Shown one piece after another: positions 52,619 through 53,196 of a DNA stretch of 58,254 nt. Within the stretch, counting starts at the first letter, position 1. Every line of letters starts with the position of its first letter. The DNA comes from Euprymna scolopes (Eukaryota): NCBI GenBank assembly GCA_053919585.1, contig JBSSHM010000319.1; one strand, written 5' to 3'. The position numbers and the translations under genes were made by a program. A model generated the notes under the pieces. It worked only from the letters and a program-made list of their open reading frames with translations, did not search any database and was not told the origin of the DNA.

Positions 52619-53196
52619 GTTAGAGACGACCCCAAAATTGAAGGGGACTAAAACATAAGCTTCAGCTTCTATACGCTTTTCTTTTGGTTAGAGACGACCC
52701 CAAAATTGAAGGGGACTAAAACTCTTAGTTCCATACCTGTCCCAGTAAAAAGTCGTTAGAGACGACCCCAAAATTGAAGGGGACTAAAACCATATCTTTA
52801 GCGGTCTCCGGATTTCTCTTCAGTTAGAGACGACCCCAAAATTGAAGGGGACTAAAACTCCTCAGTGAGAGTTGCTTGCCTCTCTCTGTGTTAGAGACGA
52901 CCCCAAAATTGAAGGGGACTAAAACCTTCCTCATATAAGCACTCATCGCGCCCATCTGTTAGAGACGACCCCAAAATTGAAGGGGACTAAAACCCCAAAG
53001 ATTGTAGGTAGGGTAGAAATTTTTTGTTAGAGACGACCCCAAAATTGAAGGGGACTAAAACCCCAACAAACTCAGTGACAGAGGTTCCTAGATTGTTAGA
53101 GACGACCCCAAAATTGAAGGGGACTAAAACCTAAAACAAAGTCGTTGTAGGTAATCCTCAGTTAGAGACGACCCCAAAATTGAAGGGGACTAAAAC
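52619..53196 (+). CRISPR. CRISPR array with 9 identical 36-nt repeats (GTTAGAGACGACCCCAAAATTGAAGGGGACTAAAAC) and 8 spacers of 30-33 nt; type VI-A (Cas13a)-like repeat
   Basis: Repeats start at 52619, 52687, 52755, 52823, 52890, 52958, 53026, 53095 and 53161; spacers are unique; CCCC/GGGG stem and GACTAAAAC 3' end. Confidence 0.98.

What the first reader, a model, noticed from the sequence alone, without database searches (positions are those of the whole stretch)
52619..53196. Cas13a (type VI-A)-like CRISPR array with no recognisable cas gene nearby, in a gammaproteobacterium
Seen: 9 identical 36-nt repeats, 8 unique spacers, no degenerate terminal repeat, and no cas1, cas2, cas6, cas10 or cas13 in about 52 kb upstream or 5 kb downstream. 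Known (recalled): the Leptotrichia wadei Cas13a repeat GATTTAGACTACCCCAAAAACGAAGGGGACTAAAAC matches at 30/36 positions, including the CCCC/GGGG stem and the whole GAAGGGGACTAAAAC end. Type VI-A arrays normally sit next to cas13a and are best known outside Gammaproteobacteria. Inference: this is an RNA-targeting array served in trans by a distant Cas13a or type III system, a remnant after effector loss, or an array used by an unrecognised effector. The intact repeats suggest recent activity or recent arrival.
Basis: partly seen in the sequence, partly recalled or inferred. Interest (0 to 1): 0.88.

Follow-up and report, generated by a model that had tools for sequence, protein, structure and literature searches.

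The report
Stand-alone Cas13a-type CRISPR array
A real nine-repeat CRISPR array of the RNA-targeting Cas13a kind sits, with no cas gene within reach, in the chromosome of an uncultured gammaproteobacterium found inside a squid genome assembly; it extends the host range of this repeat type but is otherwise an ordinary orphan array.

Summary
There are nine identical 36-nt repeats and eight unique 30-33-nt spacers at 52619-53196, with no further degenerate unit.

Tool searches, not memory, tie the repeat to type VI-A. More than 125 loci carry sibling repeats (30-32/36 identical, same 66-69-nt period). In 26 of 26 cases the repeat lies on the same strand as an adjacent Cas13a-like gene; five of those genes were scanned with the NCBIfam Cas13a model, four passing its cut-off and one below it. 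All siblings are in low-GC, Leptotrichia-like DNA. None is gammaproteobacterial.

The window holds no Cas13a, Cas1 or any other Cas model. The array lies in a 9.3-kb segment that four sister genomes lack, inserted right after folA. That segment also carries an IS remnant and two orphan ORFs (1487 and 755 aa). These are not Cas-like: one has a signal peptide and a Cys-rich region, neither has a HEPN motif, and the only homologue found is not next to an array.

The spacers have higher GC (42%) than those of Leptotrichia-type arrays (29%), and they are pyrimidine-rich, as antisense RNA guides are. This suggests the array was once built and used with a Cas13a-type effector outside a Leptotrichia-like setting.

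Whether cas13a lies elsewhere in the genome or was lost could not be tested: I put a relic at about 0.45 and service in trans at about 0.38. No spacer targets were found, and no sequencing run was listed to test transcription. This is a new member of a known kind, of moderate interest.

The parts
52619..53196 (+). CRISPR array: 9 identical 36-nt repeats and 8 unique spacers (30-33 nt), period 66-69 nt. The repeat forms a CCCC/GGGG stem with a 9-nt loop and ends in GACTAAAAC.
   Evidence: coordinates, identity, no further copies; fold, -6.1 kcal/mol; 30-32/36 identity to repeats beside verified Cas13a; orientation: repeat strand equals cas13a strand in 26/26 sibling loci, so + here.
52285..52618 (+). 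Putative leader, 334 nt, 25.7% GC, between the ORF2 stop and the first repeat. No strong sigma-70 match and no terminator, so read-through from ORF2 is possible.
   Evidence: only short AT-rich matches to sibling loci, so no leader homology; the cas13a-to-array gap in sibling loci is 209-264 nt.
53197..53519 (+). Trailer and metE upstream region, 323 nt, 22.6% GC. It holds no repeat remnant and no cas remnant.
50017..52284 (+). ORF2, 755 aa, an orphan protein. It overlaps the end of ORF1 by 32 nt in another frame. It is basic and helix-rich, has no HEPN motif, and occupies the position cas13a holds in canonical loci.
   Evidence: no family; no motif; no homologue in 5.8 billion proteins or 1.84 billion representatives; atlas 0.64 only; AF2 pLDDT 35.6; hhalign against a Cas13a profile, 0.4%; absent from 125 sibling loci; no PDB or plasmid match; marginal colinear match to P0121, E = 0.044.
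45585..50048 (+). ORF1, 1487 aa. It has an N-terminal hydrophobic signal-like segment, a Cys-rich region (20 Cys between residues 628 and 864), a hydrophobic segment near residue 1115 and a Lys-rich tract. It is probably secreted or membrane-bound and is not Cas-like.
   Evidence: features; no family; atlas 0.67 or less; a single homologue, P0121, 26% identity, on a contig with no array.
44705..45004 (-). Remnant of an IS transposase (C-terminal part of a DDE_Tnp_1 domain) near the left edge of the inserted segment.
   Evidence: PF01609, E = 8e-16, profile positions 82-200 of 200 only.
44212..53519 (.). Genome-specific segment of 9.3 kb between folA and metE: IS remnant, AT-rich tandem repeats (45220-45375), ORF1, ORF2 and the array. 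No terminal repeats bound it.
   Evidence: synteny with four sister contigs (about 73-75% nt identity) stops at 44207-44211, and their folA is followed by purF or an EamA gene; only low-complexity repeats at the edges. GC3 of ORF1 and ORF2 equals that of native genes.
43724..44211 (+). folA, spread over three reading frames (43724-43852, 43812-44114, 44110-44211). It appears to be a pseudogene, or the assembly has indels there.
   Evidence: tblastn with sister folA proteins.
53520..55806 (+). metE in three pieces (53520-54215, 54152-54970, 55006-55806). It appears to be a pseudogene, or the assembly has indels there. It is followed by intact metF and a LysR regulator.

Best explanation
This is a genuine type VI-A (Cas13a-class) CRISPR array that has been separated from its effector. 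Most likely it is a relic, left in a decaying, genome-specific segment after the neighbouring cas13a (and any cas1/cas2) was lost.

Shown: the array exists, its repeat belongs to the Cas13a repeat family, the transcribed sense is the + strand, no cas gene is within 52.6 kb upstream or 5 kb downstream, and the segment is absent from sister genomes.

Inferred: the array was built and used with a Cas13a-type effector in a host whose invaders had about 40% GC. Spacers would have been captured by Cas1-Cas2, and the pre-crRNA read from the AT-rich leader. Cas13a would cut it 4-5 nt upstream of the CCCC/GGGG stem, giving a handle of about 29-30 nt plus spacer, and the guide would pair with invader mRNA and switch on the HEPN RNase.

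Without Cas13a the array may still be transcribed, for example by read-through from ORF2, but it would give no immunity.
For: Array and repeat family. Sibling repeats lie beside Cas13a (NF038188, E = 1e-191 to 1e-112; PADLOC 797 bits) and share 27-28 of the last 30 nt with ours. No effector in cis. Local decay: an IS remnant, with folA and metE each in three frames or pieces while their neighbours are intact, and ORF1/ORF2 possibly one gene now in two frames. Lineage-specific insertion. No gammaproteobacterial genome among the GTDB representatives has the repeat, so the system probably came in once as a unit, and units normally keep cas13a 209-264 nt or about 1.3 kb from the array. Past function: spacer GC is 0.42 against 0.29 for 373 family spacers (p = 1e-4), and the spacers are pyrimidine-rich in crRNA sense like the family's (0.409 against 0.439 purine). 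The word 'CRISPR' meets no first-stage note outside this window that describes a bacterial array, and 'cas', 'cas13' and 'hepn' meet none at all. That is very weak evidence. Processing site: PMC8776769.
Against: No cas13a remnant, even a degraded one, is detectable in the flanks, so any deletion was clean. The IS remnant is 7.6 kb from the array, not next to it. All nine repeats are perfect. Arrays of this family without a nearby cas13a do exist: L057 has flanks of 5.1 and 8.8 kb, and L005 lies on a different contig from the cas13a of the same MAG. The rest of the bacterial genome could not be searched. The frameshifts in folA and metE could be assembly errors. The spacer statistics rest on eight spacers.
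Confidence: 0.45

Rival explanations
1. It is a satellite array served in trans. An intact cas13a, with or without its own array and cas1/cas2, lies elsewhere in this bacterial genome. It processes and uses the crRNAs from this array for RNA-guided defence.
For: Nine perfect repeats and a family-typical spacer length of 30-33 nt. Spacer GC and antisense-type purine bias fit a system that works in this kind of host. Stand-alone arrays occur in the same repeat family (L005 with L004, and L057). The literature describes isolated arrays used by resident Cas proteins (PMC8616872; PMC13142298, abstract).
Against: No first-stage note on another bacterial array or any cas gene in this assembly, which is weak. 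A lineage with no gammaproteobacterial relatives carrying this repeat probably acquired a single compact locus, and in such loci array and cas13a are adjacent. The neighbourhood shows gene decay.
Confidence: 0.38
2. The array is used by an unrecognised effector encoded by the orphan ORF1/ORF2 pair directly upstream, forming a new CRISPR-linked module that uses VI-A-type crRNAs.
For: ORF2 is on the array's strand and ends 334 nt before the first repeat, close to the cas13a-to-array gap of 209-264 nt. Both ORFs have no assigned function and almost no homologues, so nothing positively assigns them to another role.
Against: Neither has a HEPN motif. hhalign of a Cas13a profile against ORF2 gives 0.4%. 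ORF1 has a signal-like N-terminus, 20 clustered cysteines and hydrophobic segments, all features of an exported protein. The only homologue (P0121) sits among housekeeping genes with no array. Neither ORF has a relative in 891 kb around 125 arrays of this repeat family. A repeat this close to Cas13a handles implies a Cas13a-like binding partner.
Confidence: 0.04
3. The array is served by a type III system or another Cas6-dependent system elsewhere in the genome, which would use the 8-nt ACUAAAAC tag.
For: The repeat ends in ACTAAAAC, loosely like Cas6-type 8-nt tags (sequence). One weak PADLOC CARF-model hit (E = 5e-6) occurs somewhere among the window's housekeeping ORFs.
Against: Every sibling array beside a typed effector has Cas13a (34 loci by phmmer; NF038188). 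No Cas6, Cas10 or RAMP model is hit in the window. The CARF hit is not in ORF1, ORF2 or any of the 20 previously unannotated ORFs, so it is a cross-match inside a housekeeping protein.
Confidence: 0.04
4. It is an assembly artefact: the array, or the whole low-GC segment, comes from another organism and was joined to this contig by mis-assembly.
For: The window comes from an animal (squid) assembly that holds bacterial contigs. The repeat family is otherwise known only from low-GC Fusobacteriota- or Bacillota-like DNA.
Against: GC3 of ORF1 and ORF2 (0.25) and of the downstream metF and lysR (0.23-0.25) matches the native genes (0.25-0.33). Spacer GC is unlike Leptotrichia arrays. The repeat differs at 4 or more positions from all 125 sibling loci. 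folA upstream and metE-metF-lysR downstream are ordinary chromosomal genes of similar composition.
Confidence: 0.03

Closest known systems
Type VI-A CRISPR arrays of Leptotrichia (the Cas13a loci of L. wadei, L. buccalis and L. shahii types)
   Same: 36-nt repeat, 30-33-nt spacers, CCCC/GGGG stem with a 9-nt loop, and an identical 3' part GAAGGGGACTAAAAC. Identity is 30-32/36 overall and 27-28/30 in the part kept in the mature handle. The spacers are pyrimidine-rich in crRNA sense.
   Different: No cas13a beside it. The host is a gammaproteobacterium with about 37% GC rather than 22-33%. The 5' end is unique (GTTAGAGACGA, where all siblings begin with GAT) and so is the TT loop variant, which was not found in any collection searched. 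Spacers are 42% GC against 29%.
Orphan (isolated) CRISPR arrays, such as the E. coli I-F CRISPR4 remnant arrays, Enterococcus faecalis CRISPR2 and Listeria RliB-CRISPR
   Same: A well-formed array with no cas gene in the neighbourhood. It may be a remnant or may be used in trans (PMC8616872; PMC4580645, listed).
   Different: Those are type I or II repeats, or of unknown type. No orphan array of the VI-A type in Gammaproteobacteria turned up in the literature search. Unlike the E. coli case, no spacer matches a cas gene of the family.
Rhodobacter capsulatus Cas13a system (a proteobacterial type VI-A system)
   Same: It shows that VI-A systems do occur in Pseudomonadota. Cas13a processes its own pre-crRNA 4-5 nt upstream of the stem-loop (PMC8776769), which is the processing step inferred here.
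   Different: It is an alphaproteobacterium with cas13a present. I did not compare its repeat with ours.

Membership tests
Type VI-A CRISPR-Cas (Cas13a) array | Regular array of direct repeats of about 36 nt with unique spacers of about 30-33 nt | tested here: met
   The family's spacer length runs 30-33 nt with median 32.
Type VI-A CRISPR-Cas (Cas13a) array | Repeat sequence and structure of the Cas13a crRNA family (short G-C stem, A-rich loop, 3' flank GACUAAAAC) | tested here: met
   (fold); 30-32/36 identity to repeats beside ORFs that match NF038188 Cas13a.
Type VI-A CRISPR-Cas (Cas13a) array | cas13a gene (two HEPN R-x4-H motifs, about 1150-1400 aa) adjacent to the array on the same strand | tested here: not met
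   no Cas13a in 58 kb. In sibling loci 26/26 share the strand and lie 0.2-4.7 kb away.
Type VI-A CRISPR-Cas (Cas13a) array | cas13a somewhere in the same genome | not testable with these tools
   Only this window is readable. The genome is in none of the collections. The earlier notes mention no cas gene.
Type VI-A CRISPR-Cas (Cas13a) array | Transcription and processing into crRNAs with a 5' handle of about 29-30 nt | not testable with these tools
   No sequencing run was listed for the array or for pnp.
Type VI-A CRISPR-Cas (Cas13a) array | Spacers that match transcripts of phages or other mobile elements | tested here: inconclusive
   No match in the phage or plasmid collections, in IMG/VR for seven spacer cores, in the window or in the fetched loci. 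The strand-composition bias fits antisense guides.
Orphan (isolated) CRISPR array | No cas gene within the neighbourhood of a bona fide array | tested here: met
   none in 52.6 kb upstream or 5 kb downstream.
Type III (Cas6/Cas10) served array | Cas6, Cas10 or RAMP genes, with repeats of that family linked to type III loci elsewhere | tested here: not met
   No such model is hit in the window. Sibling arrays are linked to Cas13a only.

The most novel reading that the evidence does not exclude
The two orphan proteins directly upstream (ORF1 and ORF2, which have almost no relatives among billions of proteins) form, alone or together, a new effector or accessory module that uses Cas13a-type crRNAs from this array.
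Probability: 0.04. Interest if true: 0.9.

Novelty: new member of a known kind. Interest (0 to 1): 0.35.

Why it matters
If the array is what it seems, it is the first Cas13a-type repeat I could find in a gammaproteobacterium. That organism is an uncultured, animal-associated lineage, far from the low-GC oral and gut bacteria where this repeat family otherwise lives. Its spacers appear to have been captured outside that low-GC world. That points to a divergent Cas13a, present or recently lost, in marine or host-associated Gammaproteobacteria. Such an enzyme would be worth finding as a natural variant for RNA-targeting tools, and as a case of defence-system gain and loss in a symbiont. On its own, an orphan array is a common and well-described thing.

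Tried and rejected
- **Cas13a or Cas1 remnants in the window.** tblastn with proteins from sibling loci found nothing.
- **ORF1 and ORF2 as hidden Cas proteins.** All of these were negative or useless: Pfam, NCBIfam and PADLOC, the HEPN regex (13), the word-index search (29, 61), exhaustive HMMER (50), the atlas (30, 46; scores 0.67 or lower, so the toxin-like names there are not evidence), AF2 (76; pLDDT 35.6, so no fold search was run), hhalign (79), and PDB and plasmids (100-103).
- **The exact repeat elsewhere.** It is absent from GTDB representatives, JGI metagenome contigs and IMG/VR.
- **Spacer targets.** None were found. One 22-nt match to a Bacillus plasmid (E = 2) is chance. The 12-nt match of spacer 6 in many loci is one chance hit multiplied by homologous loci.
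- **Anti-cas spacers, as in E. coli orphan arrays.** No spacer matches the family's cas13a genes.
- **Leader homology to Cas13a loci.** Only AT-rich, low-complexity matches.
- **Island as a foreign, low-GC import.** Rejected as an argument, because GC3 equals that of native genes.
- **Island as a bounded mobile element.** No terminal repeats.
- **Sequencing runs for transcription.** None was listed, so read laying was never used.
- **Public contigs encoding the window's proteins.** None is on record.
- **Weak PADLOC CARF hit.** It is not in ORF1, ORF2 or the 20 unannotated ORFs.

Full report
**1. The observation**

The sequence at 52619-53196 holds nine exact copies of the 36-nt unit GTTAGAGACGACCCCAAAATTGAAGGGGACTAAAAC on the + strand. 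They are spaced 66-69 nt apart and separated by eight different spacers of 30-33 nt. Allowing up to nine mismatches, no further copy exists on either strand of the 58-kb window, so there is no degenerate terminal repeat. The repeat folds into a four-pair CCCC/GGGG stem with a nine-base loop. This is an unmistakable CRISPR array.

**2. Which kind of array**

I did not rely on the recalled Leptotrichia wadei repeat. Instead I searched public collections for the stem and 3' part of the repeat.

- Among one genome for each of 185,579 species, the pattern CCCCAAAANNGAAGGGGACTAAAAC occurs in only five stretches. These are a Leptotrichia rugosa plasmid, a Leptotrichia MAG (two contigs), an Erysipelotrichia MAG and a Mycoplasmatales MAG.
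- Their repeats are 36 nt long with the same period, and they match ours at 30-32 of 36 positions and at 27-28 of the last 30.
- The large ORFs beside them are Cas13a. L004, L001, L056 and L036 match NCBIfam NF038188 at E = 1e-191 to 1e-112, and L012 matches more weakly. L004 scores 797 bits on the PADLOC Cas13a model.
- 34 loci carry a Cas13a-like ORF by phmmer.
- In 26 of 26 cases the repeat, read as ...GACTAAAAC, is on the coding strand of cas13a. The first repeat starts 209-264 nt after the gene in 12 loci, or 1.3 kb or more after it in 12 others.

So the repeat belongs to the type VI-A family and the transcribed sense here is the + strand. Cas13a enzymes cut their own pre-crRNA a few bases upstream of the stem (4-5 nt for the R. 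capsulatus enzyme; PMC8776769). That would leave a handle of about 29-30 nt from this repeat.

**3. What is not there**

- The window has no Cas13a. No family hit appears for the two adjacent ORFs, and they have no in-frame R[NQH]xxxH motif.
- tblastn with Cas13a and Cas1 taken from sibling loci finds nothing better than E = 0.08.
- None of the 43 ORFs of 120 aa or more hits a Cas model in PADLOC, and no Cas family is among the 25 Pfam families shown, of 85 matched.
- The PADLOC hits are cross-matches of housekeeping enzymes, for example a cysteine desulfurase to SspA/DndA.
- One weak CARF-model hit (E = 5e-6) lies in some housekeeping ORF. It is not in ORF1, ORF2 or the 20 ORFs that lacked a name.

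**4. The surroundings**

The window is ordinary chromosome: nrdA, comEC, xseA, accC, xsc, a molybdopterin oxidoreductase, manC, rpsO-pnp-lgt-thyA-folA, and metE-metF-lysR.

Its PNPase is 82-88% identical to unnamed metagenomic proteins and 62-65% identical to named Gammaproteobacteria such as Methylophaga, Salinisphaera and Wenzhouxiangella. The organism is therefore an uncultured gammaproteobacterium. Earlier notes of this scan describe the assembly as a squid's, which I did not test.

Four sister contigs keep rpsO-pnp-lgt-thyA-folA at 73-75% nucleotide identity. The similarity stops at window position 44207-44211, and their folA is followed by purF or an EamA gene. So 44212-53519 is a genome-specific segment. 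It contains:

- the C-terminal remnant of a DDE transposase;
- AT-rich tandem repeats;
- ORF1 (1487 aa) and ORF2 (755 aa);
- a 334-nt AT-rich leader, the array, and 323 nt up to metE.

No terminal repeats bound the segment. Its lower GC (31.7% against 37.0%) does not show foreign origin, because GC3 of ORF1 and ORF2 (0.25) equals that of native genes.

Both genes that flank the segment are broken. folA lies in three frames and metE in three pieces, while their neighbours are intact. I could not tell real decay from assembly indels; the break sites are not long homopolymers.

**5. Are ORF1 and ORF2 an unrecognised effector?**

- ORF2 has no homologue in 5.8 billion proteins or in an exhaustive HMMER pass over 1.84 billion representatives. 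It has no PDB or plasmid match. Its single-sequence AlphaFold model is useless (pLDDT 35.6). hhalign against a nine-sequence Cas13a profile gives 0.4%.
- ORF1 has a signal-like hydrophobic N-terminus, 20 cysteines between residues 628 and 864, a hydrophobic segment and a lysine-rich tract.
- ORF1's single homologue, P0121 (26% identity over the Cys-rich and following region), lies among housekeeping genes on a 26%-GC contig with no array.
- A marginal match of ORF2 to P0121 (E = 0.044), colinear with and downstream of the ORF1 match, hints that ORF1 and ORF2 descend from one gene. In the window they overlap by 32 nt in different frames, and an in-frame TAA at 50011 stops the A8 run from joining them.
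- Neither ORF has a relative in 891 kb around 125 arrays of this repeat family.

The atlas scores (0.67 or lower) are below the level at which its family names mean anything. These ORFs look like an exported protein or proteins of unknown role, not a crRNA-guided enzyme.

**6. Clues to the array's history**

- The eight spacers average 42.1% GC. This is higher than every one of 38 sibling arrays (mean 29.7%, maximum 38.3%) and higher than 373 sibling spacers (29.3%, Mann-Whitney p = 1e-4). It is higher than the segment itself (31%, p = 5e-4) but compatible with the native chromosome (37%, p = 0.09). The spacers were therefore probably captured from invaders of about 40% GC, not in a Leptotrichia-like setting.
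- In crRNA sense the sibling spacers are pyrimidine-rich (purine 0.439, p = 4e-18), as expected for guides selected to pair with purine-rich mRNA. Ours show the same bias: 0.409 pooled (binomial p = 0.005), with the five leader-proximal spacers at 0.31-0.41. With eight spacers this is only suggestive.
- No target was found in phage, plasmid or IMG/VR collections, in the window or in the fetched loci.
- The missing degenerate terminal repeat is not unusual, since 11 of 37 sibling arrays lack one.

**7. Explanation**

The array is a real VI-A array without its effector in cis. Two readings remain, and the tools cannot separate them: the rest of the genome is not readable, the genome is in no collection, and no sequencing run was listed.

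I put a relic left by loss of cas13a slightly ahead, at 0.45. My reasons:

- the repeat has no gammaproteobacterial relatives, so it probably arrived as one compact locus;
- in compact loci cas13a is adjacent to the array;
- the neighbourhood shows an IS remnant and broken genes;
- no note on any other bacterial array or cas gene exists for this assembly, which is very weak evidence.

Service in trans by a cas13a elsewhere gets 0.38. It is supported by the perfect repeats and by stand-alone arrays in the same family, namely L005 with L004 in one MAG, and L057. An unknown effector (0.04), a type III partner (0.04) and mis-assembly (0.03) are unlikely for the reasons given above.

**8. Comparison and novelty**

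Orphan arrays are common and well described (PMC8616872; several papers listed). Type VI-A systems do occur in Pseudomonadota, for example in Rhodobacter capsulatus (PMC8776769). What is new here:

- the host class: one literature search found no report, and no gammaproteobacterial genome among the species representatives carries the repeat;
- a repeat variant seen nowhere else;
- spacers that point to use outside the low-GC bacteria where the family is known.

That makes it a new member of a known kind, of moderate interest. The first-stage scan noted the same segment twice more on this window (s1-268961, s1-269011) and did not report this array type on other DNA of the assembly.

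Noticed in passing
L003:2155-5670 (-), contig CALDDH010000009.1 (uncultured Mycoplasmatales MAG): A 1171-aa protein with two R-x4-H motifs sits between two arrays. Their repeat is identical to that of a canonical Cas13a locus (L056). Yet the protein matches no Cas13 model: NCBIfam, PADLOC and PDB give nothing, and hhalign against a Cas13a profile gives 1.7%. A partial ORF in L002 (Erysipelotrichia MAG, next to cas1) is weakly similar to it. 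It may be a very divergent type VI effector that uses VI-A-type repeats.
   Followed up: partly
window 45585-52284: Two overlapping orphan ORFs (1487 and 755 aa). ORF1 has a signal-like N-terminus, 20 clustered cysteines and a Lys-rich tract. It has a single distant homologue among 5.8 billion proteins (P0121). ORF2 has none apart from a marginal colinear match to the same protein (E = 0.044), which hints at one ancestral gene now read in two frames that overlap at 50017-50048.
   Followed up: partly
window 43724-44211 and 53520-55806: folA (three frames) and metE (three pieces), the two genes flanking the inserted segment, are both broken, while thyA, lgt, pnp, metF and the LysR regulator next to them are intact. 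This is either local gene decay in a host-associated bacterium or assembly indels.
   Followed up: partly
window 45220-45375: An AT-rich tract of T-run/AAT repeats is followed by three tandem copies of a 21-nt unit (GCTATAATGAAAAAAAGATAA), about 210 nt upstream of the ORF1 start. Each unit holds a TATAAT-like hexamer.
   Followed up: no
window 29334-31103: The window encodes sulfoacetaldehyde acetyltransferase (xsc, TIGR03457 at E = 0), and earlier notes mention a DHPS desulfonation operon on another bacterial piece. Organosulfonate use fits a marine, animal-associated lifestyle.
   Followed up: no
window, unidentified ORF among the annotated housekeeping genes: One PADLOC 'CARF3--CARF' model hit at E = 5e-6. 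It is not in ORF1, ORF2 or the 20 previously unannotated ORFs.
   Followed up: partly
L005 and L004 (Leptotrichia MAG CAUQGN01); L057: Arrays of the Cas13a repeat family also occur away from cas13a. L005 lies on a different contig of the same MAG as the cas13a in L004. L057 has flanks of 5.1 and 8.8 kb with no Cas13a-like ORF.
   Followed up: partly
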